The notes below the pieces were generated by a model. That model saw nothing but the letters and a program-made list of their open reading frames with translations. It had not been told where the DNA came from and did not search any database. A stretch of DNA of 64,000 nucleotides from positions 186,001 through 250,000 of the IMG/VR virus record IMGVR_UViG_3300033995_001164. One strand, written 5' to 3'. The first letter of the stretch is position 1. Each line of letters starts with the position of its first letter. This document shows, piece after piece, positions 16,751 through 59,920 of this stretch. The translations under genes were made by a program, and so were the position numbers.

Positions 16751-19567
16751 TTAGGAATTTAGTAACTTATCCAATTCTTTTGAAATTTCTCCTAAAGATT
16801 CTTGTCCATGACCTAAATTAATCATTTGAGCCCCTTCTATTAAGTTATTCTCAACCAACATATTTAAGTTATTAATTCGAGATTCCGGGGTTATTTCCGC
16901 TTCTCCTCCGACTGGTGGAGGTGGAACTGTTTCTTCCCCTGCCGGTGGTAATTCTTCGCCGCCTAAATCGGAGGTTTCAAATTCTCCCCCGCCAAATGAT
17001 GGAGGTGGTTCAGATGTTTCAGTTGAAGCTGTTTGGGTTCCTCCTGAGGTACTACCATAAAGTTTATCGATATTATCAAATAAACCTGTTTTAGTGATAA
17101 CCGTAGCAGTTGCCTTAAGCTCTTCCCCTACCGCTCTTTCAATTCTTTGTTGTTGTAAATCCAAACGAACTTCTTCATCTGACCATCCAAAAATATGTTT
17201 CTTAGCCCATGTTGCTGAAGTCGCTTGAATACCATTTCCTGGGTCCGCAACTAAATCTTTGTATAATAAAACTTTTTCTTTCCAAACGTCAATTTTTAAT
17301 AAATCTGCTTGGGTTGATGGATTACTTAATCCTAATGTGAAATTATCCAATTCGTCTTCAAATCCTAATAAAAATAAATGGACGATTGCAATTTTATTTA
17401 ATTCTGCAACCATACTTTTTTGAATTCTATTAATTGTTCTAGCAAAACGAATATCTTGTAAAGATAAATTTTTACCATCTCCTACAACTTCTTCAAAACC
17501 TAAAAATGCTTTAGGTACACGAAGAGCTGTTAATAGTTTCTTTTGGATATATTCAATATCGGCAATTTCTGAAAGGTTGGTCGCCCCTGGTAATGTAGTA
17601 ATCGGGTCAGGTGCTGAAGGGTCTCTAACTGGGATGAAATAATCTTGGTCTACCGCCATTTGGTTAAACCTCATGTCAACATTACCTGTTTTATTATCTA
17701 CAACCTGTTCTCTTTTAAATTTATTTGCAACTCTTTGTACGTATGCCTCGACATCGTCATCGTTCATATTACCAACAAATACTTTAAACATTCTTCTTTC
17801 AGGTGCTCTTGATGTACGATAAATTAACATCGCATCTTCTGATAGTAATAATTGTTTCCAAATTCTTCTTGCTTTCTCTAACATAGAAGTACCATAAGGA
17901 AGTTTTCTGTCGTCACCTAATAATCTAAAATGACCAATTTCCCATGTTTGGAATTCCATGTTTTTAATCTTCCAAGTAAAATGAAGAGATTTTTTGTCTT
18001 TATCTAATTCTTTAGTTATGTCAGTCGATATTTTTGCACTTACCCCTACTTCATGTCTTTCAATCTCGATTGTTGGTAATTGTTGAACACCTACAATTCC
18101 TTTTTCAGGGTCTAATTTTAAAAAAATAAAGTTATCACCATACTTGCAAGTGTTTCTTGTCCACATTGGTAGGTTAGTGTTAATGTCAAGTGAGTTATTA
18201 AACAAGTCGGCTAATACCCCTTTTATTCTGTTTGACTCTGAATAAATTTGTAATATAAACCCATCTTCATTTGTTGTGGTTGATTCTTCCGCATAAATGT
18301 CTAACGCTGCTGATATTTCAGGAGTGTTATGGGAAAATATAGTATCTGTTGCAAAGTTTTTATATCCGGGAACTGTTAAATCATAAACAGGAATAACTCC
18401 ATTAGGTTCTATTGACACTATTTTATGATTCAAATTAATTGAAGACCCCACACTTTTTGACGTAGAGTATTTTGATTTTTCAATACCATAAGCGTCGAGG
18501 AATGTTGACCAATCTTTGTAACCGGAATTTGTAATATCTCTTTGTAATTTCCTGTATGAAACATTCAACTTTAAAGATGTTTTTTTCAAAGATTTCTCAA
18601 TTCTCGCCGTTTCAATGATATTGTCAAAAGGTATCGAAAAATATGCTGGATTTTTATTACCTTTACGTTTTCCACCCCAAGTCATTTTACCTTTACGTTT
18701 GGCAACTTCAGACATTTTTAATCTATACTCAGGATTAGACCATAATTTTTCATTATTCAATCTTGCATGATATGCTCTATGTTCTGAAATATCCATAATT
18801 AATAAATTTTCAGGAAGATTATTTTTCCCATTAAAATCAATATGGTGTACTTCTTCGTTGTCTTTTATTTCTACTTCATTATACCATTTTGCAATTAAAC
18901 TATGTTCTGATACCCACCCATGGTGTCCTTCATCTTTATTGCAAGTGTAAACCCAATTATAGTTTTGGTTATTATAAAATGATTTACGATAAAACGGCAT
19001 CATAGAATCCCCGTCTTTGAGGTTCATAACTCTCTCAAATGACCCATCTCTTTTCATTAATTGGTGTTCCCATGTTGTGATAATAAATGAACCATCGTCA
19101 AAAATAACTTTATATGTCATTTCATCTCGAGTGTAATGTGCATTTCGAGCCTTTGAGGGTACGACTTTTTTCAAATTGTGGTCATACGAATAAGTGATAA
19201 ATTCGTAATCTCTGCCTTTGTCAGCAAGTTCTTTTATGGTTATAAAACCATCAGGAGTTGCTATTTTTGTGTCTCCGGCGATGCAATATTCCATACTTTC
19301 ATAATCGTATTGTGCCGATAATCTTGACGGTTCATAATATATTGCCTGAGAATATAAATTATTCTCAACTTTTGCCCATTGATTGGTTAAATAAAAGGTT
19401 TGTTGCGCCTGTAACTTTTCTTTCTCGTATTCTTCTTTACTTTTGGTACGTAGTAATTCCTTTTTATCAAACTTAAAAGTTGGATAATCTTGGTTTAATT
19501 GAGAATTAGGCCCAAATGTTTGGGATAATCTCTGCCATACCGTCATATTATTTTGTTGTTCGCTCAT
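16751..19567 (-). CDS. gp20: Portal protein, T4 gp20 family, interrupted by an intein
   Basis: TPEISAALDIYAEE, PYGTSMLEKARRIWKQLLLSEDAMLIYRTSRAPERR, DYFIPVR, DIEYIQKKLLTALRVPKAFL. Confidence 0.93.
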   Translation of the reverse strand: MSEQQNNMTVWQRLSQTFGPNSQLNQDYPTFKFDKKELLRTKSKEEYEKEKLQAQQTFYLTNQWAKVENNLYSQAIYYEPSRLSAQYDYESMEYCIAGDTKIATPDGFITIKELADKGRDYEFITYSYDHNLKKVVPSKARNAHYTRDEMTYKVIFDDGSFIITTWEHQLMKRDGSFERVMNLKDGDSMMPFYRKSFYNNQNYNWVYTCNKDEGHHGWVSEHSLIAKWYNEVEIKDNEEVHHIDFNGKNNLPENLLIMDISEHRAYHARLNNEKLWSNPEYRLKMSEVAKRKGKMTWGGKRKGNKNPAYFSIPFDNIIETARIEKSLKKTSLKLNVSYRKLQRDITNSGYKDWSTFLDAYGIEKSKYSTSKSVGSSINLNHKIVSIEPNGVIPVYDLTVPGYKNFATDTIFSHNTPEISAALDIYAEESTTTNEDGFILQIYSESNRIKGVLADLFNNSLDINTNLPMWTRNTCKYGDNFIFLKLDPEKGIVGVQQLPTIEIERHEVGVSAKISTDITKELDKDKKSLHFTWKIKNMEFQTWEIGHFRLLGDDRKLPYGTSMLEKARRIWKQLLLSEDAMLIYRTSRAPERRMFKVFVGNMNDDDVEAYVQRVANKFKREQVVDNKTGNVDMRFNQMAVDQDYFIPVRDPSAPDPITTLPGATNLSEIADIEYIQKKLLTALRVPKAFLGFEEVVGDGKNLSLQDIRFARTINRIQKSMVAELNKIAIVHLFLLGFEDELDNFTLGLSNPSTQADLLKIDVWKEKVLLYKDLVADPGNGIQATSATWAKKHIFGWSDEEVRLDLQQQRIERAVGEELKATATVITKTGLFDNIDKLYGSTSGGTQTASTETSEPPPSFGGGEFETSDLGGEELPPAGEETVPPPPVGGEAEITPESRINNLNMLVENNLIEGAQMINLGHGQESLGEISKELDKLLNS
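18326..19285 (-). mobile_element. Intein (320 aa) with HNH homing endonuclease in the portal
   Basis: Starts CIAGDTKIATPDG (block A) and ends VYDLTVPGYKNFATDTIFSHN followed by Thr; internal EVHHIDFNGKNNLPENL. Confidence 0.92.
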
Positions 19568-25692: not shown

Positions 25693-26424
25693 CTAATCCT
25701 CAATTTTTCTTTCAATAGATAGTTTTTTATCTGTCCCTTTATTAATCGAATCGAATAATTTTTTAACATGTCCTGACCTTCTTAGGTATTTAAACACTAA
25801 ATTTTCGTAAGATAGTTCTCCGCCATCATCCAATCCTGATTGACGATATTTTTTTAATTTATCTTTAATTGATTCAAGAATTTTAATGTCCCCATTCTCA
25901 ACGGAAGTATCAATTTTCTCAGTCCAATTTTTGATTTTATCTTCAAGAGCTTTTTTATTTATTTCTAAATTTGTTTTTTTTGGAACATTAATCCATTCAT
26001 TATTCATAATAGAGTATACTCCTGAACTAATATGGGGTTCTTCGGCGTCTTGAGCATATAATTCCACATCATAACCAAAGATTTTAATGTTATGATTTAT
26101 ATTAAAAAGTTGTTTTTTTAAATTGAAAAGTTCTTTGTATAATTCATCCTCGTCTCCGTATTCATCCATATCCACAATAACATGTAAATCAAAATCTGAA
26201 AATTCAGACCAATTAAAATTTGATAATGAACCGGTTAGAACGACATCTTCAACAAATACATTATCACCCAAATAATCTACAAACTCTTCGGCGATACGCT
26301 CAAGGGCTTCTTTAACCTTAGGAATCATAGTCGCCTTCTTCGGGTTATCCGGATTTTCCCATACTTTTGGGTTAAGGGTTTCTTTAATAGAAAAACTATT
26401 AAGTATTTGTTGGAATTTACTCAT
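25693..26424 (-). CDS. Nucleotidyltransferase, Pol-beta superfamily
   Basis: LTGSLSNFNWSEFSDFDLHVIVD (GS...DxD) and third acidic residue in YDVELYAQD. Confidence 0.8.
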   Translation of the reverse strand: MSKFQQILNSFSIKETLNPKVWENPDNPKKATMIPKVKEALERIAEEFVDYLGDNVFVEDVVLTGSLSNFNWSEFSDFDLHVIVDMDEYGDEDELYKELFNLKKQLFNINHNIKIFGYDVELYAQDAEEPHISSGVYSIMNNEWINVPKKTNLEINKKALEDKIKNWTEKIDTSVENGDIKILESIKDKLKKYRQSGLDDGGELSYENLVFKYLRRSGHVKKLFDSINKGTDKKLSIERKIED

Positions 26425-26435
26425 TATTATAAATA

Positions 26436-26678
26436 CTACGCTTTCTTATACTTGTAGGCTTTTGATATTTCTGTTACAAAAAATTTTCCTTGGGATTCTG
26501 CAGCCCTAAATTTAGTGTATGTTTGGTGTGGAACTTCATCATACTCATACTTCAATCCATTGTTAAATTCAACAACTAATTTTTTTGTTTCAGTATCGTA
26601 TTCTGTTCTTTTAATGTTTGACGATTTAATTTCATTAATAATCTTCGTCCCCTTGATTTCCTCTCTCGTAATCCCCAT
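26436..26678 (-). CDS. KTSC domain protein
   Basis: SSNIKRTEYD...LVVEFNNGLKYEYDEVP..TY..F..AESQGKFF. Confidence 0.9.
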   Translation of the reverse strand: MGITREEIKGTKIINEIKSSNIKRTEYDTETKKLVVEFNNGLKYEYDEVPHQTYTKFRAAESQGKFFVTEISKAYKYKKA

Positions 26679-26967
26679 CGCTTAGTGGTGTTAGTTCGTT
26701 TATGTTTTGTAATATAGGTGTTAAATAACTAGTGAAGTCATTCCAATCTACATCAAAACCTAAGTCTTTTACCTGTTGAAATAAAGCTTTTTGTTCATCA
26801 CCAAAATTATGATATAATTTCATTAAACGATTTTCGTAATACGGTGGTTTTTCTAAATCTTTTTCACTCCATCCTTGAGATTGAAAATATTGTCTAATTT
26901 CAAGATATAATTCACTTAATCGTTGTAAACCAACGCTACTATTTAAAAATTTTTCAAATGGTTTCAT
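26635..26967 (-). CDS. Hypothetical protein
   Basis: Likely start MKPFEKFL at 26967; late-type motif upstream. Confidence 0.5.
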   Translation of the reverse strand: MKPFEKFLNSSVGLQRLSELYLEIRQYFQSQGWSEKDLEKPPYYENRLMKLYHNFGDEQKALFQQVKDLGFDVDWNDFTSYLTPILQNINELTPLSDGDYERGNQGDEDY

Positions 26968-27027
26968 ATTAATAAATATGGTGTATATTAGAATAAGAAA
27001 CCCCACCGGTGAGGGTGGGGTTTGATT

Positions 27028-27408
27028 TTAAAGTTTTAATTTTTTTAATTCATCACGAATTTCAATTGACCGTTCAAAGTTATGGTCTTTAATTGATTGT
27101 TTTAATTCTTCTTCAAGTTTAGAGATAGATTCTTGATTAGTTTCCATTTTTCTGATTTGGTCTCTAATCTCAACCGCTTTCTCAAAGTCTTCATTTTCGA
27201 TTGCCAACTCAAGTTGTCGTTTTAAACCATTACTACCTTTAGGTGTTTTTGGTTCTGAACTTCTATAGAATGAAGTCACTTTTATCGTACCATCTTCAGA
27301 TACTCTTGTTTCTGATTTCCATTCCCCTAACTGAGAAGAATCAAACTGAGAGAACATATTATCAAATTCTCTCAAAATGTCATTAAAATTTTTTCTGTTT
27401 CCAAACAT
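27028..27408 (-). CDS. Protein with two UvrB/UvrC (UVR) motifs
   Basis: LELAIENEDFEKAVEIRDQI and LKQSIKDHNFERSIEIRDEL. Confidence 0.85.
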   Translation of the reverse strand: MFGNRKNFNDILREFDNMFSQFDSSQLGEWKSETRVSEDGTIKVTSFYRSSEPKTPKGSNGLKRQLELAIENEDFEKAVEIRDQIRKMETNQESISKLEEELKQSIKDHNFERSIEIRDELKKLKL

Positions 27409-27578
27409 AATTTTATTTTTTAATTCAAATTTATTTTATACCTTTGTATTATTCAAATAATATACCAAACCAAAAAATATGTCAATATGTCAGGTTAAAA
27501 AAAACTTACTGACAATTTGTCTAAAAATTAGGATAAGAATAAAATTTGATACACCTTTGTAAAATAAAATTAGAAACT

Positions 27579-29594
27579 ATGAACGACTTAATGGACGACA
27601 ACGACAAATCAGGGAACAAAGCACAAAAACAAGCTATGGATACAAACACACCTGTATTAGACAACTTCAGTAGAGATTTAAATAAACTAGCTGAGGCGGG
27701 TAAATTAGACCCGGTTATTGGTAGAGATGCCGAGATTTTGAGAATCGCACAAATCCTTTCTCGTAGAAAAAAGAATAACCCTATTATCATAGGTGAACCC
27801 GGATGTGGTAAAACCGCATTGGTTGAAGGTTTGGCTATGAAAATTGTGAGTGGAGAATGTCCAAGAAACTTAGTGGACAAAAGAATCGTGAACCTTGATT
27901 TAACTTCAGTTGTTGCTGGTACAAAGTATCGTGGACAATTTGAGGAAAGAATGAAAGTGATTATCGAGGAACTTAGTGCTAATCCAAATATCATTGTGTT
28001 TATCGATGAGATTCACACATTGGTTGGTTCCGGTAATTCTTCAGGTTCAATGGATGGTTCAAACATCTTCAAACCGGCACTTGCCCGTGGAGAGGTTCAA
28101 TGTATTGGTGCGACAACTCTTGATGAGTTCCGTAAGAACATTGAGAAAGACGGAGCCTTGGAAAGAAGATTCCAAAAAGTAATTGTGGAGCCATCCACAG
28201 TTGAAGAAACAATCGAAATCCTTAAGAATGTTCGTGATAAATACGAATCATACCACAAAGTGTTGTATAGTGACGAAGTTGTGGAAACTTGTGTTAAGTT
28301 GGCTGACCGTTACATCACCGACCGTGAGTTCCCGGATAAAGCATTTGACATCTTAGATGAGGTTGGTGCTCGTATGCAAACCGAGATTAAAGTTCCTGAT
28401 GTTATTGAGGAATTAAAAAAGAAAGCCGCTGAGATTAAGATTGAAAAAATGGAAGTGGTTAAAAAACAAAACTACGAACAAGCAGCACAACTTAGAGATA
28501 AGGAGAAAAAGTTATTGATTAAACTTGAGGCGGAAAAAGATAAGTTTGCAAAACAAATGGATTTGGAGAAACAAACTATTGTTCTTGAAACCGTATATCA
28601 AGTTGTGTCAAGTATGACTAAAATCCCTGTGAGTAAAATGGATGCTGATGATTCCAAAGCGTTGATGAATTTAGATAAATCAATCATGGGTAAAGTGATT
28701 GGTCAGGATGCTGCTGTTGTTAAGATTGCAAAATCAATCAAGAGAAACCGTTTGGGTATCAAAGACCCTAACAGACCTATTGGTTCATTTATTTTCTTAG
28801 GTTCAACCGGTGTTGGTAAAACTCACTTGGCCAAACAATTAGCTAAAGAGATGTTTGGAACAGAAGATTCACTTATCCGTGTGGATATGTCAGAATACCA
28901 AGAGAAACACACCATCTCTAAATTGGTTGGAGCACCTCCGGGATATGTTGGTTACGAAGAAGGAGGTTTATTAACTGAGAAAGTTAAAAACAAACCATAT
29001 TCTGTAATCTTATTTGATGAGGTTGAAAAAGCTCACAAAGATGTTTTCACGGTATTACTTCAAATATTAGATGATGGACACGTAACCGATAGTTTAGGTA
29101 GAAAGATTAACTTCAAGAATACCTTAATCATCCTTACATCTAACTTAGGTGTTAAGAAATTACAAGACTTCGGTACTGGTATTGGATTCTCTAATAACTC
29201 TTACGCCGACGAAGAAGCTAAGAAAGAAATCTTGATGAAAGAGATGAAGAATTTCTTTTCTCCTGAGTTCATTAACCGTATTGATGACACTATTGTCTTT
29301 AATTCATTAACTCCTGAAGATATCGATAAAATCACCGATATTGAGTTAAAGAAATTAATGACTCGTCTTGGTGAGATGAAATACACCGTAACCTACGATG
29401 ATGAGGTTGTTAAATACCTATCTAAAATTGGATACGATGAAGTATATGGTGCAAGACCATTGAAGAGAGCAATCCAAGACAAAATTGAGGATTTGTTATC
29501 CGAAGAAGTATTAACCGGTAAAATGGTTGAGGGTAAATCCTACCAAATCAAAATGAAGGGTGAGGACATCACAATTCAGAAAAAAGGAAAATAA
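27579..29594 (+). CDS. clpC: ClpC-type AAA+ unfoldase lacking the N-terminal Clp-repeat domain
   Basis: GEPGCGKT/DEIH and GSTGVGKT/DEVEK ATPase modules, single UVR M-domain, TGIGF ClpP-docking loop. Confidence 0.9.
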   Translation: MNDLMDDNDKSGNKAQKQAMDTNTPVLDNFSRDLNKLAEAGKLDPVIGRDAEILRIAQILSRRKKNNPIIIGEPGCGKTALVEGLAMKIVSGECPRNLVDKRIVNLDLTSVVAGTKYRGQFEERMKVIIEELSANPNIIVFIDEIHTLVGSGNSSGSMDGSNIFKPALARGEVQCIGATTLDEFRKNIEKDGALERRFQKVIVEPSTVEETIEILKNVRDKYESYHKVLYSDEVVETCVKLADRYITDREFPDKAFDILDEVGARMQTEIKVPDVIEELKKKAAEIKIEKMEVVKKQNYEQAAQLRDKEKKLLIKLEAEKDKFAKQMDLEKQTIVLETVYQVVSSMTKIPVSKMDADDSKALMNLDKSIMGKVIGQDAAVVKIAKSIKRNRLGIKDPNRPIGSFIFLGSTGVGKTHLAKQLAKEMFGTEDSLIRVDMSEYQEKHTISKLVGAPPGYVGYEEGGLLTEKVKNKPYSVILFDEVEKAHKDVFTVLLQILDDGHVTDSLGRKINFKNTLIILTSNLGVKKLQDFGTGIGFSNNSYADEEAKKEILMKEMKNFFSPEFINRIDDTIVFNSLTPEDIDKITDIELKKLMTRLGEMKYTVTYDDEVVKYLSKIGYDEVYGARPLKRAIQDKIEDLLSEEVLTGKMVEGKSYQIKMKGEDITIQKKGK

Positions 29595-29598
29595 TAAG

Positions 29599-29626
29599 AA
29601 AGGGGGATGAAAATCCCCTTTTTTTT
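29599..29626. terminator. Bidirectional terminator
   Basis: AGGGGGAT-GAAA-ATCCCCTT followed by a T tract, between convergent genes. Confidence 0.7.
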
Positions 29627-29632
29627 ATATGG

Positions 29633-29974
29633 TTAATTGTCGGAATATGACTTCCAAATAGTCCTTGTAGTTGATAATGGTTCTATGACAATATCAACAT
29701 CTAAATTATATGAATTTTGGAACCATACTGCAACCATCTCTTTAGTTTCCAACCACGGTTTATTAAACATTTTCATAATGAAAGTTATAATACTATCATC
29801 AAGTCCGAGTCTACCGTATTTTTCATAATATTCCATAACAACATCACCATTTTTCATAAAATAATAAAGGTCAGGATAATCAACAGAAACTTTGTGTTTT
29901 AACCCTCCATATTCATCTTCCAACCACTTGTTGATTAGACTATCAACCCTATTTTCGTTAATTAATATTTTCAT
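29633..29974 (-). CDS. Hypothetical protein with leader-like N-terminus
   Basis: Starts MKILINE; late-type motif upstream. Confidence 0.55.
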   Translation of the reverse strand: MKILINENRVDSLINKWLEDEYGGLKHKVSVDYPDLYYFMKNGDVVMEYYEKYGRLGLDDSIITFIMKMFNKPWLETKEMVAVWFQNSYNLDVDIVIEPLSTTRTIWKSYSDN

Positions 29975-30025
29975 ATTAATAAATACCCTAAAACAAAAAA
30001 GAAACCATTTGGTCTCTTTTATATT

Positions 30026-30868
30026 TTAGAAGAATCTGTGATTATATCTTGGAATCTCAACTACTTCTTTGTAGTGTAACTTATTCCCAAGTTTTTCAAT
30101 CATTTGTCTTCCCATTTCAATCCCTTTGAAAACATCCTCAATCACCACATATTCGTTTGGTGTGTGGTAATCGTAATACCCAATTGAAAAGTTGATACAA
30201 GAAAAACTAAATTTACTTCTCAACGCATAAACATCAGTATATGGATGAACCATGTATTGCATATCTTCGTTATGCATCCCTTCGGTTAATACTTGGTCAC
30301 AAACTTCAAAGAATTCTGACTCTCTATCAAATAAATCTTGACTGAAACATTTTTCGGTAATCATCCAGTTCTCCGGAGCGTCAAATTGAATTCCATAACC
30401 AACATTAGTGAAGAATTCAGGGTCAGCCTTTTTGGAACCGTGACATCCGGTTTCTTCAGATACAAAGAAAGTGGCTTTTAAATTTGGTAATTCTTTTAGT
30501 AATTTTAAACAAGCAAATACTCCACATTTATCATCACCACCGATTCCGGTTGGTAATCCATGTAAGTTGTAAGCTTTCAACGAATCTTTAATCTCACCTT
30601 GAGCATTAGGTAATTGTTCTTCATGAACTATTATATTGTCTAATCTGTGGACTGTGTCAGTATGTGCAATAACACAAGGGAAGTAAAAGTCCTCAGGAAG
30701 TGTTTCAAGTTCTTGTTTGGTTGCATAAACATTTTTGTGTTCATCAACATAATGTTCTATATTGTTTTCGGTCAACCAATTCTGTAAAAATTCAACCATT
30801 AGGTCTTCTTTATAAGTTACGGTTGGAACACTAAGAACTTCTTTTAGTAATAATATATCGTTTGTCAT
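30026..30868 (-). CDS. Zinc exopeptidase, M20/M28/M42 clan
   Basis: IAHTDTVH, GGDDKCG, EETGCHGS, YHTPNE metal-binding motifs. Confidence 0.85.
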   Translation of the reverse strand: MTNDILLLKEVLSVPTVTYKEDLMVEFLQNWLTENNIEHYVDEHKNVYATKQELETLPEDFYFPCVIAHTDTVHRLDNIIVHEEQLPNAQGEIKDSLKAYNLHGLPTGIGGDDKCGVFACLKLLKELPNLKATFFVSEETGCHGSKKADPEFFTNVGYGIQFDAPENWMITEKCFSQDLFDRESEFFEVCDQVLTEGMHNEDMQYMVHPYTDVYALRSKFSFSCINFSIGYYDYHTPNEYVVIEDVFKGIEMGRQMIEKLGNKLHYKEVVEIPRYNHRFF

Positions 30869-30885
30869 GGGACAAAGGTAATAAA

Positions 30886-32025
30886 TTAATACATGTCATC
30901 CAAATTAAATAAGGTATTTTGATATAAAAAATTGTTAAATTCTTCTTCTTCCAATTCAAGTTTTTTAAATAATCCGGTATCTTTAGTTTTGACAATTAAT
31001 TTAACTGACATATTACCCGGATTAAACGATTCAATTTGAAAAATAATATTGTCGTCTTTAGGGGTTTCATACCAAGTTTTTAATTTATATTTAGATACAA
31101 CTCGGTTTCTAAATTCAACAAAGTCTTGAATTGTATATTCTTCGTCACTTTTTTCATCTAATTTTTCAATAATCTTTTCAAATTGTCTTGTAACCTCATT
31201 ATTAAATGATACTGAATCGAAATATTGTTCATCTTGAAACTCGTAAATTTTCTCATACCAACCACCAGGAGTTGACCCTCCAAAAGACTTATTTATTATT
31301 TTTGTAACAATCTCTTTGGCATTAGAATTAAATAAATTTAGTTGTAACGCACCCAAATATAAATCGGCAAGAGTGATTTCCACTTCATCCATATTGTAAT
31401 TAAGGTTAATACCATTTTCCTCTAACGGTTTATTAAATTCATCTTCGATTGCCTTTTTTGCGACAGTATTCATTTCGTGCTCTTTTTCAGATTGAAAATC
31501 CCCGAGGATATAATCAATTTCATTAGGAAATAAATCAAGTAACATTTCGGATAATTCTTGTCTGTATTCTTCACTCTCGAGATTAAATTCTTTTTCAGGT
31601 AATATTGTGGATGCGATGTCCTTAAGAGTTTCTTTATTCTCATCGTTCAATTCATAATACACATTGTACCCTTCTTTAAAATCTTGTTCTATTTGATATG
31701 AATCTTGAAAATCATATCCATTGTATGAATTAATAGCTTGCATGAACCAAACATCTGATTCGTCCATGTCAATTTCTTCTAAAAATTCTTTATCATCTTC
31801 AAATTTAATGGTTATAATAGATTGACCTAAAGGTTCCTTAGTTTGAATATAGTCTATAGTATTATCGATATTATATAACTCGTCAGTACTAATTCTACCT
31901 TTAGAAAAATTTCTAAGACCGACAACTAAGTTCTTATCTTCCTCTTTTTCAGTGTCTTGCTCTGTCTGTATGACCCTTCTGATAATATGATTAAGGTCTG
32001 ATTCAGTTAATTTTATTACTTTCAT
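30886..32025 (-). CDS. Leader-bearing acidic protein
   Basis: Likely start MKVIKLTESDLNHIIRRVIQTEQ at 32025. Confidence 0.55.
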   Translation of the reverse strand: MKVIKLTESDLNHIIRRVIQTEQDTEKEEDKNLVVGLRNFSKGRISTDELYNIDNTIDYIQTKEPLGQSIITIKFEDDKEFLEEIDMDESDVWFMQAINSYNGYDFQDSYQIEQDFKEGYNVYYELNDENKETLKDIASTILPEKEFNLESEEYRQELSEMLLDLFPNEIDYILGDFQSEKEHEMNTVAKKAIEDEFNKPLEENGINLNYNMDEVEITLADLYLGALQLNLFNSNAKEIVTKIINKSFGGSTPGGWYEKIYEFQDEQYFDSVSFNNEVTRQFEKIIEKLDEKSDEEYTIQDFVEFRNRVVSKYKLKTWYETPKDDNIIFQIESFNPGNMSVKLIVKTKDTGLFKKLELEEEEFNNFLYQNTLFNLDDMY

Positions 32026-32056
32026 TAAAATGATTTTACAATAAATACTTTTTTTG

Positions 32057-32087
32057 TTTGGAATTTCAATATTTATGTTTATCTTTG
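32057..32087 (+). promoter_or_regulatory. Bacteroidota sigma70-type promoter for tmRNA
   Basis: TTTG (32057-60), 19-nt spacer, TATCTTTG (32080-87). Confidence 0.75.
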
Positions 32088-32101
32088 TACCATAATAATA
32101 G

Positions 32102-32511
32102 GGGGATGAAATGGAATTGACTGACATATCTACTTATTTAGGGCACGTAGTGAGAAGTTTCCTATCACTTAAATCTATGGATGACAAAATTATAAATGGC
32201 AACATTTTAAACAAAATGGCTCTAGTAGGTCTTGTACGTCAAGATGAGCTTGTGAACGTAGCGTAAGCAAACACACATTGGGGTCGACGGATATATGTAC
32301 CTTGCAACAGAAATATCTTAAGGTGTGATACCACCCGAAGAGTGTCAAGGTCTCGTTTGAGGGTCTACCTATTAAAGTGAACCTCCCACAGTTGTAGGTA
32401 ATGATGGAAAAATTAAAACCTTCTTATTTGTCAGTTGAGAATTAATTGAATAAACGTGTAGACCTAAACACTTAGGATGGACAACACCCGATTTCGAAAT
32501 CGGCATCTCCA
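32102..32511 (+). ncRNA. ssrA: tmRNA; tag reading frame 32198-32266 encodes (A)GNILNKMALVGLVRQDELVNVA
   Basis: 5' GGGGATG pairs with 3' CATCTCC-A including the G3.U70 pair; GGAATTGAC D-loop; GGAC...TTCGAA T-arm; resume context ATAAAT-GGC. No encoded CCA. Confidence 0.9.
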
Positions 32512-32520
32512 CTTTAATAA

Positions 32521-32553
32521 AAAAAAAATCCATCATATGATGGATTTTTTTTT
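32521..32553 (+). terminator. Terminator after tmRNA
   Basis: AAAATCCATCAT-ATGATGGATTTT inverted repeat with T tract. Confidence 0.7.
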
Positions 32554-32616
32554 TATTAATTTTCTAAAATCATATCATTATATCCATTTTTTTTATTTAT
32601 ATTTGCAAGATAAAAT

Positions 32617-33351: not shown

Positions 33352-33765
33352 ATGGGTGAGAACAAAAAACCAAGAGTATATCATTCAAAAATATTAGAAG
33401 ATGTATTATCAAACATTACTCCGGAAGAGTTGGAATCAACTGAAATTGAAATGAGAAATATGGGGTATGAAGAGACCTATACCAATAAAGAAATTAGAAC
33501 TTGGTGGTTAAACCAAACTGAGGGAAGAAGACGAGATATGGTTCGGGAATACTTCAAAGGTGGTAATAGTGAAAGAATCAACACATTATACGGCATTATG
33601 CCGGAAGAAATGGAGGAAATATATAACATTAATGTTGATGTTATTATAATGGATTGGGAAGAAATCTTATTTGATTTTATAGATTTTTACCCGTGTCAAT
33701 TACCTGACGAATTATTTGAATGGTTGGATAATAATTACGAAATACCAAAGAAAAAAAATGGTTAA
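33352..33765 (+). CDS. Hypothetical protein
   Basis: Coupled ORF. Confidence 0.55.
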   Translation: MGENKKPRVYHSKILEDVLSNITPEELESTEIEMRNMGYEETYTNKEIRTWWLNQTEGRRRDMVREYFKGGNSERINTLYGIMPEEMEEIYNINVDVIIMDWEEILFDFIDFYPCQLPDELFEWLDNNYEIPKKKNG

Positions 33766-33865
33766 ATGTTATCAACATATTGATACCACATCTGATGAAT
33801 GGTGTTGGAAATGTCAGGGATTAACCGATAATGAGAGGTTTAATTCAACTAAAATAATAAATAAG

Positions 33866-34366
33866 ATGGAAAAGATTAAAATAATATTCCTTGATATCGA
33901 TGGAGTTCTTAATGTTTACTCCCACGACCACGATGAGTTTGGTAGTCAATTTCAACCCCAATTTGTTAATAACCTTAAACGAGTTATTGAAGAAACGGGT
34001 GCCAAGATTGTAATATCATCAACTTGGAGATATGGTGGATTACAGAGGATGAAAGATATGTGGGAAAAGAGGAACTTACCTGGTGAGGTGATTGATATCA
34101 CACCGGATTGTACTTACTTACATAATGAAGGTTTATTTGAATGGATAGATGAAGTTGAAAGAGGTCACGAAGTACAATATTGGTTGGATGAACATCCTGA
34201 AGTGGAAAGATATGTTATCTTAGATGATGATAACGATTTCTTACCCCACCAACGAGGTAATTTTGTTAGAACGGCAAACAATATCAATCATCCGGATGCG
34301 TTGGACATCGGATATGGATTAACGAATGAATGTACAAACAAATCAATTAGAATATTAAACGTGTAA
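33866..34366 (+). CDS. HAD-family phosphatase (Swiss-Army-Knife RNA-repair-like)
   Basis: IIFLDIDGVLN, IVISSTWR, RGHEVQYWL...YVILDDD. Confidence 0.85.
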   Translation: MEKIKIIFLDIDGVLNVYSHDHDEFGSQFQPQFVNNLKRVIEETGAKIVISSTWRYGGLQRMKDMWEKRNLPGEVIDITPDCTYLHNEGLFEWIDEVERGHEVQYWLDEHPEVERYVILDDDNDFLPHQRGNFVRTANNINHPDALDIGYGLTNECTNKSIRILNV

Positions 34367-41694: not shown

Positions 41695-41767
41695 TGGCCC
41701 CGGAGAATTACGATATCCCGACTTCTACATTATGAGTGTAGCACTCTAACCTCTGAGTTACGAGACC
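41695..41767 (-). tRNA. tRNA-Ile2 (CAT), atypical T-arm
   Basis: GGTCTCG/CGGGGCC-A; CTACA-CTCATAA-TGTAG; T-arm GGGAT-ATCGTAA-TTCTC. Confidence 0.75.
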
Positions 41768-41858
41768 TTAAATTAGGTTTTGGTGTAAACACCCTACACG
41801 ACTTTAACCTAAAAAGTACACTGAGTAATTTAAAACCCTCAGCGGTTTAATTGTTAAC

Positions 41859-42089
41859 CTATTGGTGGTGTTTTATATACCGACCAAACTTATCCACCCT
41901 CACAGAGAGTTTCTCCAATCTAAAGTTCCATTCTTTGAACTTTCCTAAGCCCGATTTTACTCTTGCTTGTTTAATCGCAGATTCTTCTGCCTTCTCACGT
42001 CCGTCTTCTGTTGTTTCAACAAAAAACGTGGGAGCCTGAACACCGTTTCTAACGGGAACTACTCTCCAAATTCTCAATTTCTGAGTCAT
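41859..42089 (-). CDS. Hypothetical protein
   Basis: 76-aa ORF. Confidence 0.5.
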   Translation of the reverse strand: MTQKLRIWRVVPVRNGVQAPTFFVETTEDGREKAEESAIKQARVKSGLGKFKEWNFRLEKLSVRVDKFGRYIKHHQ

Positions 42090-42173
42090 AAATTTTAGCT
42101 AATAGCTAAAACTATGTGGAGTTCGGATTTTGGTTTTTCATATTGATAATTTACACATTTTCTAATTAAAAGA

Positions 42174-42277
42174 AATATTAAACATATGGTGGTCTATCAC
42201 CTCACATTTTCAACGGGTCCAATTTTATGTGTGCCTCACTGGTTTACTTCTGCAATGTCACTTTAATGTTTAATATT
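42174..42277 (-). ncRNA. Candidate structured RNA, 104 nt
   Basis: Perfect 12-bp closing helix AATATTAAACAT/ATGTTTAATATT; internal CACAT/ATGTG and GGTG/CACC helices. Confidence 0.45.
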
Positions 42278-43073
42278 ACTTATTTTGGACAATTTTTATC
42301 ATTTCCATAATCCCATAATTTTTACACCATTTTCTAACCGCATTATCACTAACATTATAATGACGACCAACGGATGTAAATGTCTTGTGTTTCTCAAAAA
42401 TTTCCAATAATTCAGGAACTTTTGGGATTATGTTATTTATTCTTTTTCCTTCATAATAACACTCAATAGAACAATATTTTTTACTTTTTCCAGTATATTC
42501 TCCGTTACAAGTTAAACATTGTTTAATTTCTTTTTCCTTTGGTGGTAATTTAACTAACTCGGCATTTGTTAAATTATTTAACCACTCTATGGATGGTTCT
42601 GATTTTTTTGTTTTTACATTTTTACCTCGATAATTATTAGTCATAGCGTGACAATTAGGGCATAATATTTGTAAATTATTTAATCTATTATCATTTGAAT
42701 CACCATTTATATGATGTAATTCTAATTTAATTGGTTGTTCCATCCATTGTGATAATCCACAACATTCACAGGTTTTAGTTTTTAACCCGTCTTCAATTAA
42801 TCGTTTTCTTAAATTATGACTCCCATAAACAGAACCTTTAATTAATATTTTATCCAAACTCATTGGTGGGATAACTTTTCTATATCTATCACCCTGATTC
42901 CAACCTTGTCCGGTAAAATGGGATGTATCAATATTAAATTCTGTAATTTTATTTCTGAGTGTTTTATAATTTCCACCAGCAGCAATAATCCCTAATTTTT
43001 TACAAACTTCAGATATTGACAACGATTCTTTAATAACTTGTTCTAAACTCTCTTTTGTGTGTTTATATTTCAT
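42276..43073 (-). CDS. HNH homing endonuclease
   Basis: CECCG...LELHHINGDSNDNRLNNLQILCPNCHAMT; HTH-like termini. Confidence 0.9.
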   Translation of the reverse strand: MKYKHTKESLEQVIKESLSISEVCKKLGIIAAGGNYKTLRNKITEFNIDTSHFTGQGWNQGDRYRKVIPPMSLDKILIKGSVYGSHNLRKRLIEDGLKTKTCECCGLSQWMEQPIKLELHHINGDSNDNRLNNLQILCPNCHAMTNNYRGKNVKTKKSEPSIEWLNNLTNAELVKLPPKEKEIKQCLTCNGEYTGKSKKYCSIECYYEGKRINNIIPKVPELLEIFEKHKTFTSVGRHYNVSDNAVRKWCKNYGIMEMIKIVQNK

Positions 43074-43150
43074 AATGTTCCTTTATTATAAATATCTCGA
43101 ACCTACACAAAGTTTAAGTTTTTTAATTATTTTTTACGATTACCTTTTTG

Positions 43151-43235
43151 TACCCGGAGAGGGACTTGAACCCTCAACCCCCTTACGGAGGACTAGATTT
43201 TAAGTCTAGCGTGTATACCATTCCACCACCCGGGT
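43151..43235 (-). tRNA. tRNA-Leu (TAA)
   Basis: CTAGA-CTTAAAA-TCTAG; long variable arm; canonical T-arm. Confidence 0.95.
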
Positions 43236-43240
43236 AGTTG

Positions 43241-43316
43241 TTGATAAGGTGGGTTTCGAACCCACGGACTCTCGGCAGTTACCCACCGAGTGTTTCGCCA
43301 ACAAAACTTCTTACCA
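43241..43316 (-). ncRNA. tRNA-like RNA 1 with GNRA hairpin in place of the anticodon loop
   Basis: TGGTAAG/CTTATCA-A acceptor, GTTT/AAAC D-stem, GTGGG-TTCGAAA-CCCAC T-arm; central CTCGGTGG-GTAA-CTGCCGAG. Confidence 0.7.
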
Positions 43317-43327
43317 ATCCTTCCACC

Positions 43328-43528
43328 AATGAGATTATTTTGGTGTAGATGTCCACAGTTTTTCTATTCAAAACCCATCGCGTCTTACCGCTTAAAAGTC
43401 AACAACTACTCGGAGGGATTGTTGTCAGTTCCCTTTATTCCGACAGACCCCCTCTGTAAAACCGTATGAGGCGTCAGCTACATCATTATTTCGAACGATG
43501 CCAAATCATTGAGTATCTCTATCTCATT
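43328..43528 (-). ncRNA. Candidate structured RNA, 201 nt
   Basis: AATGAGAT/ATCTCATT closing helix and several internal hairpins; no ORF. Confidence 0.45.
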
Positions 43529-43531
43529 TGT

Positions 43532-43619
43532 TGTTAGAACAGGAATCGAACCCGTGCTCTGCCGAAGATACCCCACTTTCGTGAATCGACGACCAAATAC
43601 TACCACTATATCATCTAAC
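43532..43619 (-). ncRNA. tRNA-like RNA 2
   Basis: GTTAGA/TCTAAC-A acceptor, AGTGGTAG D-loop, ACGGG-TTCGATT-CCTGT T-arm; central GTCGA/TCGGC helix bearing TTCAC-GAAA-GTGGG. Confidence 0.6.
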
Positions 43620-43624
43620 AATTG

Positions 43625-43698
43625 AGGTTCCTGTCAGAATCGAACTGACTCTATTCGGGGTTACAAAACCCGTGCACCACCTTTTATGCGTAGGAACC
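43625..43698 (-). tRNA. Atypical tRNA, tentatively Thr (TGT)
   Basis: GGTTCCT/AGGAACC-T; CGGG-TTTTGTAAC-CCCG (U31.C39 mismatch); canonical T-arm. Confidence 0.55.
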
Positions 43699-43751
43699 CT
43701 GTTGCAGAGTATTTTTTTTAAGTAGAAGTCAACTCTGTCTCTTAAACTACT

Positions 43752-43811
43752 AAAAGAAACTGTCCAAGGTCTATCCTGCTTTCGCTGTCCAGATTTTTCT
43801 CTGTTTCTTTT
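43752..43811 (-). ncRNA. Candidate small structured RNA, 60 nt
   Basis: AAAAGAAAC/GTTTCTTTT closing helix; GC-GAAA-GC hairpin; TGGACAG occurs twice. Confidence 0.35.
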
Positions 43812-43812
43812 A

Positions 43813-43905
43813 ACATCATCACTTCGGCCACATTGGGAGAACCGCAGTTCCCACGTTGTTTAAGGAGGTAGTTTGGCGGTGTATCACACCGAGTTATGAT
43901 AATGT
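43813..43905 (-). ncRNA. Candidate structured RNA, 93 nt, with ACCTCCTTA loop
   Basis: 10-bp closing helix with two G.U pairs on the minus strand; CGGTG/CACCG and GGGAAC/GTTCTCC hairpins. Confidence 0.45.
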
Positions 43906-43910
43906 ATTTG

Positions 43911-43984
43911 TACCCCCGGTGAGAGTCGAACTCACAAAACTCTTCATCCTAAGTGAAGCGGCTTTCCCGTTTGCCCACGAGGGT
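43911..43984 (-). tRNA. tRNA-Leu (TAG) without long variable arm
   Basis: CTTCA-CTTAGGA-TGAAG; only 74 nt. Confidence 0.8.
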
Positions 43985-43991
43985 ATTATTG

Positions 43992-44064
43992 TATCCTTAT
44001 CGGGATTCGAACCCAAACGACAAATTTAGAAGATTTGTATGCCAATCCATTACATCATAAGGAC
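43992..44064 (-). tRNA. tRNA-Arg (TCT)
   Basis: CAAAT-CTTCTAA-ATTTG; cloverleaf intact. Confidence 0.9.
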
Positions 44065-44077
44065 GTTTTTTTTTTTG

Positions 44078-44302: not shown

Positions 44303-44318
44303 ATTTATTTGTTTTTAG

Positions 44319-59176: not shown

Positions 59177-59920
59177 ATGAACGTAGGACAAGAATTTCAA
59201 AATTATTACACAAAACATTTAGGTAAACCATCTTTGGATTTACATAACTTCAACAATCACATTCAAAACTCGATGACTCCATATATTTTAGAGGAAAGAG
59301 AGATGAGAGTAACTCAAATGGATATTTTTTCTCGTTTGATGATGGATAGAATTCTTTGGGCTTCGGGTCCGGTTGACGATAGAATGGGTGATATTATACA
59401 ATCACAACTTATCTTCTTAGATAATTTGGATAAGAAAAAAGATATCAATTTATATCTACAAACTCCGGGTGGTAGTGTATTAAGTGGTTTAGGTATTAGA
59501 GATACTATGAACTTCATCAATGCCGATGTTGCAACCACAAATATTGGTATGTGTGCGTCCATGGGTTCGGTATTACTATCTTCAGGGGCAAAAGGTAAAA
59601 GGGAATCTTTAATTTTTTCAAAGGTTATGACTCACATGGTGTCTCACGGAACACAAGGGAATGTTCAAGACACTAGAATTGGTCAACTTGAAGCTGAAAA
59701 ATATAACTACTTGTTATTTAAAATATTAGCTGAGAATTGTGGTAAAACATTTGAACAAATGTTAGAATCATCAAGAAATGACAAATGGTTTAATTCAGAT
59801 GAAGCGTTAGAGTTTGGATTAATTGATAAAATTATCGGTGTTGAGAAAAATCAATCAATGACTGATATGATGATTGGTTTTGATGAGTATTATGAGAAAG
59901 AAATTCTTAAAAGAAAATAA
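59177..59920 (+). CDS. clpP: ATP-dependent Clp protease proteolytic subunit
   Basis: DIFSRLMMDRI, TPGGSV, CASMGS (catalytic Ser), VMTH (His), RNDKWF (Asp). Confidence 0.92.
   Translation: MNVGQEFQNYYTKHLGKPSLDLHNFNNHIQNSMTPYILEEREMRVTQMDIFSRLMMDRILWASGPVDDRMGDIIQSQLIFLDNLDKKKDINLYLQTPGGSVLSGLGIRDTMNFINADVATTNIGMCASMGSVLLSSGAKGKRESLIFSKVMTHMVSHGTQGNVQDTRIGQLEAEKYNYLLFKILAENCGKTFEQMLESSRNDKWFNSDEALEFGLIDKIIGVEKNQSMTDMMIGFDEYYEKEILKRK

What the first reader, a model, noticed from the sequence alone, without database searches (positions are those of the whole stretch)
27028..32511. Phage-encoded ClpC-ClpP-adaptor-tmRNA proteolysis module
Seen: a ClpC with the IGF ClpP-docking loop and a UVR M-domain but no N-terminal substrate/adaptor domain; a divergently transcribed small protein with two UVR motifs; an M20/M28 peptidase; a tmRNA; and a clpP at 59177. 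Established: UVR motifs form antiparallel coiled-coil dimers, and the ClpC M-domain controls activation by adaptors. Inference: the two-UVR protein is a phage adaptor or activator for the N-less ClpC, giving the phage a protease independent of host adaptors.
Basis: partly seen in the sequence, partly recalled or inferred. Interest (0 to 1): 0.62.

Follow-up and report, generated by a model that had tools for sequence, protein, structure and literature searches.

The report
Jumbo-phage N-less ClpC protease block
A 309-kb lake phage carries its own protein-shredding kit (a ClpC motor that has naturally lost its regulatory N-domain, ClpP, a peptidase, a tmRNA with an unusual tag), and a small two-UVR protein beside the motor is a plausible but unproven and dispensable regulator of it.

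Summary
The window lies in a complete 309-kb lake-water jumbo phage.

- **ClpC (27579-29594):** it aligns to S. aureus ClpC residues 144-800 only, so it is a natural N-domain deletion. All ATPase and pore motifs, the [IV]GF ClpP-docking loop and the M-domain tip (aromatic, Arg, Asp) are invariant in 88 relatives.
- **Two-UVR protein (27028-27408):** a conserved phage-only family with its own promoter and terminator. When present it always sits divergently next to clpC. It is missing from 39 of 88 ClpC lineages and from two complete relatives, and ClpC shows no compensating change.
- **tmRNA (32102-32514):** real and conserved in position. It encodes a clade-specific tag of 21-22 residues.
- **Other parts:** ClpP (59177) is a true ClpP, and the head module has its own protease. 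The M20 protein is a lid-less PepT-like peptidase tightly linked to clpC.

Published work on engineered S. aureus ΔN-ClpC gives the UVR protein a precise candidate role. That construct binds ClpP without an adaptor but is blocked by M-domain head-to-head contacts. Removing those contacts gives adaptor-free degradation of SsrA-tagged substrate.

The one complex prediction gave no verdict. I rate this a new variant of a known kind.

The parts
27579..29594 (+). Natural N-domain-less ClpC (671 aa; the mechanical ORF starts at TTG 27546). It has D1 and D2 AAA+ rings, an M-domain with a UVR motif (aa 297-307, nt 28467-28499) and a GIGF ClpP-docking loop (aa 534-537, nt 29178-29189).
   Evidence: It aligns to S. 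aureus ClpC 144-800. Walker A/B, the KYRG and GYVG pore loops, [IV]GF, the aromatic at the F436 position (Y in 84, F in 4), and the R443 and D444 equivalents are invariant or nearly so in 88 distinct relatives.
27028..27408 (-). 126-aa two-UVR protein. It has an N-terminal helix, a beta-hairpin and two UVR helical hairpins, and no cysteines.
   Evidence: PF02151, 1.1e-14, two stretches. (48 homologs, with the UVR motifs the most conserved part). (272 metagenomic homologs). (AF2 model, pLDDT 63.6). (Atlas clusters 100% viral). (best solved match is the McsA coiled-coil domain, 1.9e-6).
27457..27485 (-). Near-consensus sigma-70-type promoter (TTGACA-17-TATTAT) upstream of the UVR gene.
   Evidence: 11 of 12 matches, the best site in the region. 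This is a consensus match only.
26998..27023 (-). GC-rich stem-loop terminator immediately after the UVR gene stop.
   Evidence: 10 pairs, 6 of them G-C. It makes the UVR gene a monocistronic unit.
30026..30868 (-). 280-aa PepT-like M20 metallopeptidase that lacks the lid/dimerisation domain.
   Evidence: H69xD71, D112, E138-E139 and H235 are invariant in 83 homologs. It is present in 102 of 110 ClpC loci.
30886..32025 (-). Conserved protein of unknown function ('orf413'). The likely start is Met35 at 32025, because the ORF from 32127 would overlap the tmRNA.
   Evidence: It is found in 86 of 110 ClpC loci, and conservation begins at about residue 39. The AF2 model has pLDDT 85.7. There is no fold match in PDB or BFVD, and the best VIA Z is 5.0. 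There is no family hit.
32102..32514 (+). tmRNA. The acceptor stem is GGGGAUG/CAUCUCC with G3:U, CCA is not encoded, and the tag ORF lies at 32198-32266.
32198..32266 (+). tmRNA tag reading frame of 22 residues plus stop, with resume codon GGC. The tag ends in ...VNVA.
   Evidence: The homologous frame is found in 58 related loci, giving 36 distinct peptides with a shared pattern.
32515..32558 (.). Perfect 20-bp A/T-rich palindrome directly after the tmRNA. It is probably a bidirectional terminator.
59177..59920 (+). ClpP (247 aa) with a Ser-His-Asp triad and an N-terminal extension of about 31 residues.
   Evidence: NCBIfam ClpP NF011091 scores 227 bits over residues 5-220, against 60 bits for the ClpP-related head maturation model.
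25693..27006 (-). Three conserved upstream neighbours: a 243-aa protein with a weak nucleotidyltransferase hit, an 80-aa KTSC-domain protein and a 123-aa ORF. They belong to the syntenic block, but a functional link is not shown.
   Evidence: KTSC is present in 108 and the 243-aa gene in 106 of 110 ClpC loci.

Best explanation
The region is the core of a proteolysis and ribosome-rescue gene block conserved across a large clade of roughly 310-325-kb lake-water jumbo phages.

**Shown**
- The central gene is a catalytically intact ClpC that has naturally lost its N-terminal domain at almost the same boundary as the engineered S. aureus ΔN-ClpC.
- It keeps the ClpP-docking loop and the M-domain tip residues.
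- The phage also encodes a genuine ClpP, SmpB, a lid-less PepT-like peptidase next to clpC, and a tmRNA with a clade-specific tag of 21-22 residues.

**Inferred from published ΔN-ClpC biochemistry**
- The phage ClpC assembles into hexamers and docks on ClpP (phage or host) without any N-domain adaptor.
- It recognises degrons such as a tmRNA tag through its pore.
- It can be held back by M-domain head-to-head ring pairing.

**Inferred, least certain**
- The two-UVR protein, made from its own strong promoter, binds the M-domain UVR hairpin through a UVR-UVR coiled coil. This would relieve or tune the pairing and switch the protease on.
- It is an accessory modulator, not an essential subunit.
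- The peptidase then trims ClpP products towards amino acids.
For: **ΔN boundary and intact motifs:**

**No other Clp-system parts:** the genome has no Clp_N, MecA, McsB or second Clp ATPase.

**ClpP is not the capsid protease:** it is a true ClpP, and a separate head maturation protease lies at 14700-15416 (phrog_207, 1.7e-43).

**Synteny:** clpC, the peptidase, orf413 and the tmRNA stay together across 110 loci. The UVR gene is always divergently adjacent when present.

**Tag frame:** conserved as peptide in 58 loci.

**SmpB:** present in this genome.

**ΔN-ClpC biochemistry (PMC12583610):**
- ΔN-ClpC binds ClpP.
- It forms M-domain-dependent ring dimers and rods and is proteolytically inactive.
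- ΔN-ClpC-F436A degrades GFP-SsrA as well as MecA-activated wild type.

**UVR proteins and ClpC elsewhere:**
- The UVR family's closest matches are McsA-class UVR domains. In bacteria these lie directly upstream of clpC.
- UVR proteins are enriched in plastid CLPC1 traps (PMC8889267).

**Presence and possible expression:**
- The phage occurs in at least 18 lake metagenome runs.
- RNA-library contigs of close relatives lie on the UVR gene, clpC, the peptidase and the tmRNA.
Against: - No binding evidence exists. The complex prediction stayed under the mark, so it counts neither way.
- The UVR gene is absent from 39 of 88 distinct ClpC lineages and from two complete genomes that have no small UVR protein anywhere. 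Those ClpCs keep an identical M-domain tip, and no ClpC column separates the two groups.
- clpP is missing from one complete relative, and SmpB from several.
- In McsA the homologous coiled-coil domain serves self-oligomerisation, not demonstrated ClpC binding (PMC11046695).
- The UVR structure model is only moderately confident.
- The RNA evidence consists of contigs from metatranscriptome libraries, mostly of relatives 90-95% alike. It does not prove transcription.
- The host is unknown.
Confidence: 0.42

Rival explanations
1. The two-UVR protein is aimed at a host protein that carries a UVR motif (host ClpC, McsA, UvrB or UvrC). For example, it might block host ClpC regulation or nucleotide excision repair. 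Under this reading its position next to phage clpC reflects common ancestry or co-regulation, not partnership.
For: UVR motifs pair with other UVR motifs generally, as in UvrB-UvrC. The family profile matches the UvrB C-terminus almost as well as McsA. The gene has its own host-type promoter and terminator, as expected of an independently expressed early gene. It is dispensable for phage ClpC.
Against: The position beside clpC is strictly fixed in every locus that has the gene, across ClpC sequences as low as about 68% identical. The motif scores best against the McsA class, which is itself clpC-linked.
Confidence: 0.2
2. UVR motifs act as docking tags. The two-UVR protein, and the two other small UVR-tailed proteins of this genome, would be cargo-delivering adaptors or substrates that dock on the M-domain. 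Each would bring a different N-terminal domain, and none would act as a simple de-repressor.
For: The genome encodes three small proteins with unrelated N-terminal parts and C-terminal UVR motifs. The UVR tails are conserved in diverged relatives. The plastid adaptor ClpF and several proteins trapped by CLPC1 carry UVR domains.
Against: The two extra proteins were found only in close relatives, and a complete UVR-plus relative (G003) lacks them. No substrate-binding domain is recognisable. No binding data exist.
Confidence: 0.15
3. The N-less ClpC is not mainly a protease motor for a phage degradation pathway. It could work as a stand-alone unfoldase or assembly chaperone, or as a decoy that ties up host ClpP in inactive assemblies. 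The neighbouring genes would then be unrelated auxiliary genes.
For: Engineered ΔN-ClpC with ClpP forms proteolytically inactive rods. One complete relative has ClpC but no ClpP. Jumbo phages carry patchy Clp parts that have been proposed to serve assembly or translocation (PMC7824862).
Against: The [IV]GF docking loop, both Walker B motifs and both pore loops are invariant in 88 sequences, which argues for active threading into ClpP. Four of five larger relatives encode ClpP. Linkage to a peptidase and a tmRNA is tight.
Confidence: 0.13
4. There is no functional module. The block is a conserved stretch of host-derived genes kept together by vertical descent in one phage clade.
For: clpP and smpB lie far away and are variably present. 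Unrelated conserved genes (KTSC, a nucleotidyltransferase-like gene, orf413) are as tightly linked to clpC as the peptidase.
Against: The same themes recur in unrelated large phages: phage G has ClpXP plus a tmRNA, and huge phages carry tmRNA plus SmpB. The association of small UVR proteins with clpC also recurs independently in bacteria.
Confidence: 0.1

Closest known systems
Engineered S. aureus ΔN-ClpC (Jenne et al., EMBO J 2025, PMC12583610)
   Same: The boundary is almost identical: the phage protein aligns from S. aureus residue 144, and the construct keeps residues 147-159 as a linker. Both have D1, an M-domain, D2 and a ClpP loop. Both have an aromatic residue at the M-domain tip with conserved Arg and Asp.
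   Different: The phage protein is a natural gene conserved in hundreds of phage contigs. Its tip residue is Tyr, not Phe. Its assembly state and activity are untested.
McsA (protein-arginine kinase activator; ctsR-mcsA-mcsB-clpC operon)
   Same: Both are small proteins with a C-terminal UVR/coiled-coil motif encoded next to clpC. McsA is the best family and PDB match for the phage motif. JGI auto-annotation names the phage family 'McsA'.
   Different: The phage protein has no cysteines and so no zinc-coordination domains. It has two UVR motifs where McsA has one. The phage has no McsB. The gene is divergent from clpC, not in an operon with it.
Plastid ClpF and the UVR-domain interactors of CLPC1 (PMC8889267)
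   Same: These are non-repair proteins that carry UVR domains and associate with a ClpC whose own M-domain has a UVR motif.
   Different: They have different architectures (YccV, DUF151, EXECUTER). ClpF works with ClpS1 and the ClpC N-domain, which the phage ClpC lacks.
Clp and trans-translation genes of other large phages: phage G ClpXP plus tmRNA (PMC12484599); ClpP, ClpS, ClpA and ClpX in jumbo phages (PMC7824862); tmRNA plus SmpB in huge phages (PMC7162821)
   Same: All are phage-encoded ATP-dependent protease parts found together with tmRNA and SmpB. Phage G's tag also ends in ...QVA.
   Different: Here the ATPase is a ClpC without an N-domain, not ClpX or ClpA. It is accompanied by a UVR protein and a PepT-like peptidase, and the tag is about twice the usual length.
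phrog_4871 phage ClpC-like ATPases (e.g. Staphylococcus phage SpP)
   Same: Same Hsp100 family (1.4e-238).
   Different: The profile and phage SpP (813 aa) include the N-domain. N-less versions occur in this clade and in uncultured huge phages LR745206 and LR756508.

Membership tests
ClpC (class I Hsp100 unfoldase that partners ClpP) | Two AAA+ modules with Walker A/B motifs and pore loops | tested here: met
   GEPGCGKT, FIDEIH, KYRG, GSTGVGKT, LFDEVEKA and GYVG are invariant or nearly so in 88 sequences.
ClpC (class I Hsp100 unfoldase that partners ClpP) | Short coiled-coil M-domain with a UVR-type motif and an aromatic tip residue | tested here: met
   Y299 aligns with S. aureus F436, and R306 and D307 align with R443 and D444.
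ClpC (class I Hsp100 unfoldase that partners ClpP) | ClpP-docking (I/V)GF loop in D2 | tested here: met
   GIGF at 534-537, with [IV]GF in all 88 sequences.
ClpC (class I Hsp100 unfoldase that partners ClpP) | N-terminal Clp_N repeat domain (site for adaptors and phospho-arginine) | tested here: not met
   there is no Clp_N in the protein or anywhere in the genome. Only 18-23 residues precede D1 across the clade.
ClpC (class I Hsp100 unfoldase that partners ClpP) | ATP-dependent substrate delivery to ClpP | not testable with these tools
   This needs biochemistry.
McsA | Two zinc-coordination (CxxC) domains that bind McsB | tested here: not met
   the protein has no cysteine. The cellular McsA-like hits have 4-10 Cys.
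McsA | C-terminal coiled-coil/UVR domain | tested here: met
   NF053706 positions 141-176 and 8wtb_B 141-179. The phage protein has two copies.
McsA | Partner kinase McsB encoded alongside | tested here: not met
   there is no PF00217 match in the complete genome.
tmRNA (RF00023) | Score at or above the Rfam gathering threshold over the full model | tested here: met
   50.6 against 47 bits, model positions 1-374. Relatives score 65-112 bits.
tmRNA (RF00023) | tRNA-Ala-like acceptor stem with a G3:U pair, and a T-arm | tested here: met
   5' GGGGAUG pairs with CAUCUCC, and the T-arm is CCGAUUUCGAAAUCGG. This was read directly from the sequence.
tmRNA (RF00023) | Internal tag reading frame with a resume codon and a stop, conserved as peptide | tested here: met
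   the frame gives 36 distinct but related peptides in 58 loci. The third-codon-position bias is modest.
tmRNA (RF00023) | Pseudoknot-rich body | tested here: inconclusive
   the central part aligns with low posterior probability and a 116-nt insertion. No covariation analysis was run.
tmRNA (RF00023) | SmpB partner available | tested here: met
   SmpB at G000:C1:23555-23968 (3e-48). It is absent from several relatives, which would have to use host SmpB.
ClpP (S14 peptidase) | Ser-His-Asp triad in a CLP_protease fold | tested here: met
ClpP (S14 peptidase) | Not the capsid maturation protease | tested here: met
   One search finds a separate head maturation protease in the head module. In one search the ClpP models score far above the head-maturation model.
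M20 peptidase (PepT-like) | Di-metal ligand set (HxD, bridging D, EE, H) | tested here: met
   by motif alignment to PepT and invariance in 83 homologs.
M20 peptidase (PepT-like) | Lid/dimerisation domain inserted in the catalytic domain | tested here: not met
   the two aligned blocks are contiguous in the 280-aa protein but about 170 residues apart in PepT.

The most novel reading that the evidence does not exclude
The phage clade runs a self-contained degradation system that is orthogonal to the host's. A natural ΔN-ClpC cannot respond to N-domain adaptors. It would be controlled through its M-domain by small phage proteins that carry UVR motifs as docking tags: the two-UVR protein as a de-repressor, and other UVR-tailed proteins as cargo adaptors. 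Its substrates would be marked by a phage-specific tmRNA tag of 21-22 residues read by the ClpC pore, and a linked PepT-like peptidase would complete the recycling to amino acids.
Probability: 0.18. Interest if true: 0.8.

Novelty: new variant of a known kind. Interest (0 to 1): 0.55.

Why it matters
ClpC is normally kept off by its N-domain and M-domain and switched on by N-domain adaptors. Deregulated ClpC is toxic and is an antibiotic target. Here evolution has made the same ΔN truncation that was recently engineered in the laboratory and has kept it in hundreds of phage genomes.

That gives a natural system for asking how an N-less ClpC is controlled. The adjacent two-UVR protein is a concrete, cheap-to-test candidate for a regulator that acts through the M-domain, a mode of control not yet described for ClpC.

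The clade-specific long tmRNA tag, sitting next to the protease genes, also makes it testable whether a phage can define its own degron. For phage biology, the block adds to evidence that jumbo phages take over host proteostasis and translation quality control.

Tried and rejected
- **Complex prediction.** ClpC residues 1-389 (alignment A2) with the two-UVR protein (A1) gave ipSAE 0.16 and 0.19 against a mark of 0.32. This is no verdict and counts neither for nor against binding.
- **ARAGORN defaults.** It missed the tmRNA in the window and found it only at relaxed thresholds. At -ps80 it also produces many spurious calls in other loci. I kept only calls at the syntenic position with the shared tag pattern.
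- **Cultured and deposited phages.** megablast of the region and tblastn of the UVR protein against INPHARED found nothing.
- **Other Clp-system parts in the genome.** McsB, MecA, Clp_N and a second AAA_2 ATPase such as ClpX were all absent. ClpS was not searched.
- **ClpC residues tracking the UVR gene.** No column discriminates UVR-plus from UVR-minus phages.
- **Cellular relatives of the whole two-UVR protein.** Only motif-level matches to UvrB, UvrC and McsA-like proteins turned up. The N-terminal part has no relatives outside the phage clade.
- **orf413.** It has no Pfam, NCBIfam, PHROG or Atlas hit, and no fold match by Foldseek (PDB, BFVD) or VIA-align.
- **Host assignment from the capsid protein.** Only distant T4-like matches appeared (Flavobacterium, Microcystis and Rhodothermus phages), so the host remains unresolved.
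- **ClpP as prohead protease.** Considered and rejected, because the head module has its own protease.
- **ORF 27521-27994(-).** Rejected as a gene. It overlaps the clpC 5' end on the opposite strand and has no family hit.
- **Not run.** The large representative-protein search, because the word search, Atlas and genome scans already bounded the family.

Full report
**Context.** The window is bases 186001-250000 of a 309,177-bp IMG/VR virus record that CheckV rates as complete. It holds a portal gene, a large terminase gene, a T4-like major head protein gene, a head maturation protease gene and about 25 tRNA genes. GC content is about 31%. The same DNA is present in at least 18 lake-water metagenome runs. 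At least 596 viral contigs encode a close ClpC relative. Several relatives are complete genomes of 321-326 kb, two of them with terminal repeats.

**Observation.**
- *ClpC.* The ClpC-like ORF carries AAA, AAA_lid_9, AAA_2 and ClpB_D2-small domains and no Clp_N domain.
  - It aligns to S. aureus ClpC residues 144-800 with E 5e-222. The Met at 27579 is invariant in relatives.
  - Only 18-23 residues precede the first ATPase ring across the clade. No Clp_N domain exists anywhere in the genome.
  - The ClpP-docking GIGF loop, both Walker A/B pairs and both pore loops are invariant or nearly so in 88 distinct sequences. This is an active unfoldase, not a remnant.
- *Two-UVR protein.* The divergent 126-aa ORF has two UVR motifs.
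- *Peptidase.* The 280-aa ORF is an M20 peptidase. It matches phage peptidase phrog_4191 and aligns to PepT at the metal-ligand motifs. Those motifs are invariant in 83 homologs. The lid domain is missing.
- *tmRNA.* It passes the Rfam gathering score narrowly. Relatives at the same position score up to 112 bits. It has a G3:U acceptor stem and a T-arm.
- *ClpP.* The gene at 59177 has the catalytic triad. It scores far better as ClpP than as a ClpP-like prohead protease. The head module has its own protease.

**Conservation and gene order.** I examined 112 related loci, 110 of which hold clpC.
- Gene order is conserved: a nucleotidyltransferase-like gene, a KTSC gene, sometimes a 123-aa ORF, sometimes the UVR gene, then clpC on the other strand, followed by the peptidase, orf413 and the tmRNA.
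- Of the 110 ClpC loci, the peptidase accompanies clpC in 102 and orf413 in 86.
- The UVR gene behaves differently. A family HMM finds it in 37 of the 80 best ClpC loci, always immediately upstream and divergent. In many loci without it the gap is too short to hold a gene.
- On a ClpC tree of 88 distinct sequences, 49 have the UVR gene and 39 lack it. It occurs on both sides of the midpoint root, and the pattern needs at least 7-10 gains or losses.
- Two complete relatives have no small UVR protein anywhere in the genome.
- No ClpC alignment column separates the two groups. The M-domain tip (Tyr or Phe, Arg, Asp) is the same in both.
- clpP is absent from one complete relative. SmpB is present only in this genome and one other of the six examined.

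**The two-UVR protein.**
- *Conserved features.* The family keeps an N-terminal MF...FDxMF segment, a W...S.DG...T hairpin and two strongly conserved UVR motifs.
- *Structure model.* AlphaFold gives one helix, a beta-hairpin and two helical hairpins joined by a long helix, at moderate confidence.
- *Distribution.* All 272 sequence relatives are metagenomic, and the Atlas clusters are 100% viral. None occurs in deposited phage genomes.
- *Relation to McsA.* JGI names many of them McsA. The protein has no cysteine, so it lacks the zinc domains, and the phage has no McsB.
- *Closest motif matches.* The motif itself is closest to the McsA coiled-coil domain, then the UvrB C-terminus, then the ClpC M-domain.
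- *Cellular genomes.* The family profile finds UvrB, UvrC and small Cys-rich McsA-like proteins directly upstream of full-length clpC. Several Oscillospiraceae have no room for mcsB between the two genes.
- *Transcription unit.* The phage gene has a near-consensus sigma-70-type promoter and its own terminator.
- *Other UVR-tailed ORFs.* The genome also encodes two more small proteins, with unrelated N-terminal parts and one C-terminal UVR motif each. They are conserved in close relatives only.
- *No repair partners.* The phage has no UvrB or UvrC.

**Mechanism.** The most informative outside evidence is the 2025 study of S. aureus ClpC (PMC12583610).
- Deleting the N-domain lets ClpC form hexamers and bind ClpP without an adaptor.
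- The hexamers then pair head-to-head through their M-domains, build rods with ClpP and do not degrade substrate.
- Adding the F436A tip mutation makes the protein degrade GFP-SsrA as well as MecA-activated wild type. The SsrA degron is read by the pore, not the N-domain.
- The phage ClpC is the natural counterpart of that construct. It has the same boundary, an aromatic residue at the F436 position, and the conserved Arg and Asp.

A protein that occupies the M-domain tip through a UVR-UVR coiled coil would do what F436A does and release an adaptor-free protease that can take tmRNA-tagged substrates. The tmRNA next door encodes a tag of 21-22 residues. Its reading frame is kept as peptide in 58 loci, with 36 variants of one pattern ending in V-x-A. 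This is long and unlike canonical tags. Phage G's tmRNA tag also ends in QVA, and phage G encodes ClpXP (PMC12484599).

**What is shown and what is inferred.**
- *Shown:* the gene identities, the N-domain loss, motif conservation, synteny, the patchy distribution of the UVR gene, and the conservation of the tag frame.
- *Inferred:* adaptor-free ClpP docking, M-domain pairing and pore recognition of the tag, all by analogy with the S. aureus work.
- *Inferred and weakest:* the link between the UVR protein and the M-domain.
  - The only direct computational test gave no verdict.
  - The repeated loss of the gene, without any change in ClpC, means it can at most be a modulator.
  - In McsA, the homologous domain drives self-oligomerisation (PMC11046695).

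**Expression.** Contigs from four metatranscriptome libraries, mostly 90-95% alike and so from relatives, lie on the UVR gene, clpC, the peptidase and the tmRNA. Almost none lie on orf413. The tmRNA contigs have the highest word depth in three of the four libraries. This fits expression but does not prove it, because such libraries can contain DNA.

**Comparison with known systems.** Phage-encoded ClpP, ClpS, ClpA and ClpX (PMC7824862), ClpXP with tmRNA in phage G, and tmRNA with SmpB in huge phages (PMC7162821) are all on record. PHROGs holds a ClpC-like family whose profile includes the N-domain, and Staphylococcus phage SpP has a full-length version. N-less ClpC also occurs in uncultured huge phages of 484 and 634 kb, without a UVR neighbour. 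My literature searches found no description of N-less phage ClpC or of its UVR neighbour. UVR-domain proteins as ClpC partners have a precedent in plastids (PMC8889267).

**Verdict.** The finding is a new variant of a known kind, and published biochemistry now makes its mechanism sharply testable.

Noticed in passing
L037:10753-10969 and L046:11130-11346 (relatives; the tmRNA position): A group I intron (RF00028, 72-75 bits) interrupts the tmRNA T-loop in some relatives. In L037 the flanking exons join to give the canonical T-arm and acceptor 3' strand.
   Followed up: partly
L053:13079-13490, L063:12365-12758, L072:12944-13351, L080:10898-11311: GOLLD RNA (RF02032, about 300 bits) lies 0.2-2.3 kb downstream of the tmRNA in several relatives. 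None reaches the gathering score in the window itself.
   Followed up: no
G000:C1:14388-14816(-) and G000:C1:42254-42598(-), outside the window (L004:1501-1929, L006:1501-1845): Two further small proteins (143 and 115 aa) have unannotated N-terminal parts and a single conserved C-terminal UVR motif. They were found only in close relatives.
   Followed up: partly
window 30886-32025 (-): orf413 is conserved between the peptidase and the tmRNA. Its AlphaFold model is confident (pLDDT 85.7), but no fold or family match was found.
   Followed up: yes
window 16751-19567 (-): The 938-aa portal ORF carries an HNH endonuclease segment at about residues 194-282, ahead of the portal domain.
   Followed up: no
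window 41695-56709 (-): This block holds about 25 tRNA genes. ARAGORN calls one with a four-base anticodon (43240-43316), and one Rfam tRNA hit spans 138 nt (54830-54967), which suggests an intron.
   Followed up: no
window 32510-32514 and 25693-26424 (-): The tmRNA gene does not encode the 3' CCA. A conserved neighbour of the block has a weak nucleotidyltransferase (NTP_transf_2) hit just under the Pfam cut-off.
   Followed up: no
window 33716-34366 (+): A protein with a HAD domain of the 'Swiss Army Knife' RNA-repair type (PF18143, 6e-29) is encoded just past the tmRNA.
   Followed up: no
window 11005-12792 (-): The major head protein (595 aa) matches its nearest cultured relatives (Flavobacterium and Microcystis phages) in two pieces covering 56% of its length, which suggests an inserted segment.
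   Followed up: no
L160 (LR745206.1) and L161 (LR756508.1): Uncultured huge phages of 634 and 484 kb also encode ClpC without an N-domain. N-domain loss therefore recurs in large phages beyond this clade.
   Followed up: partly
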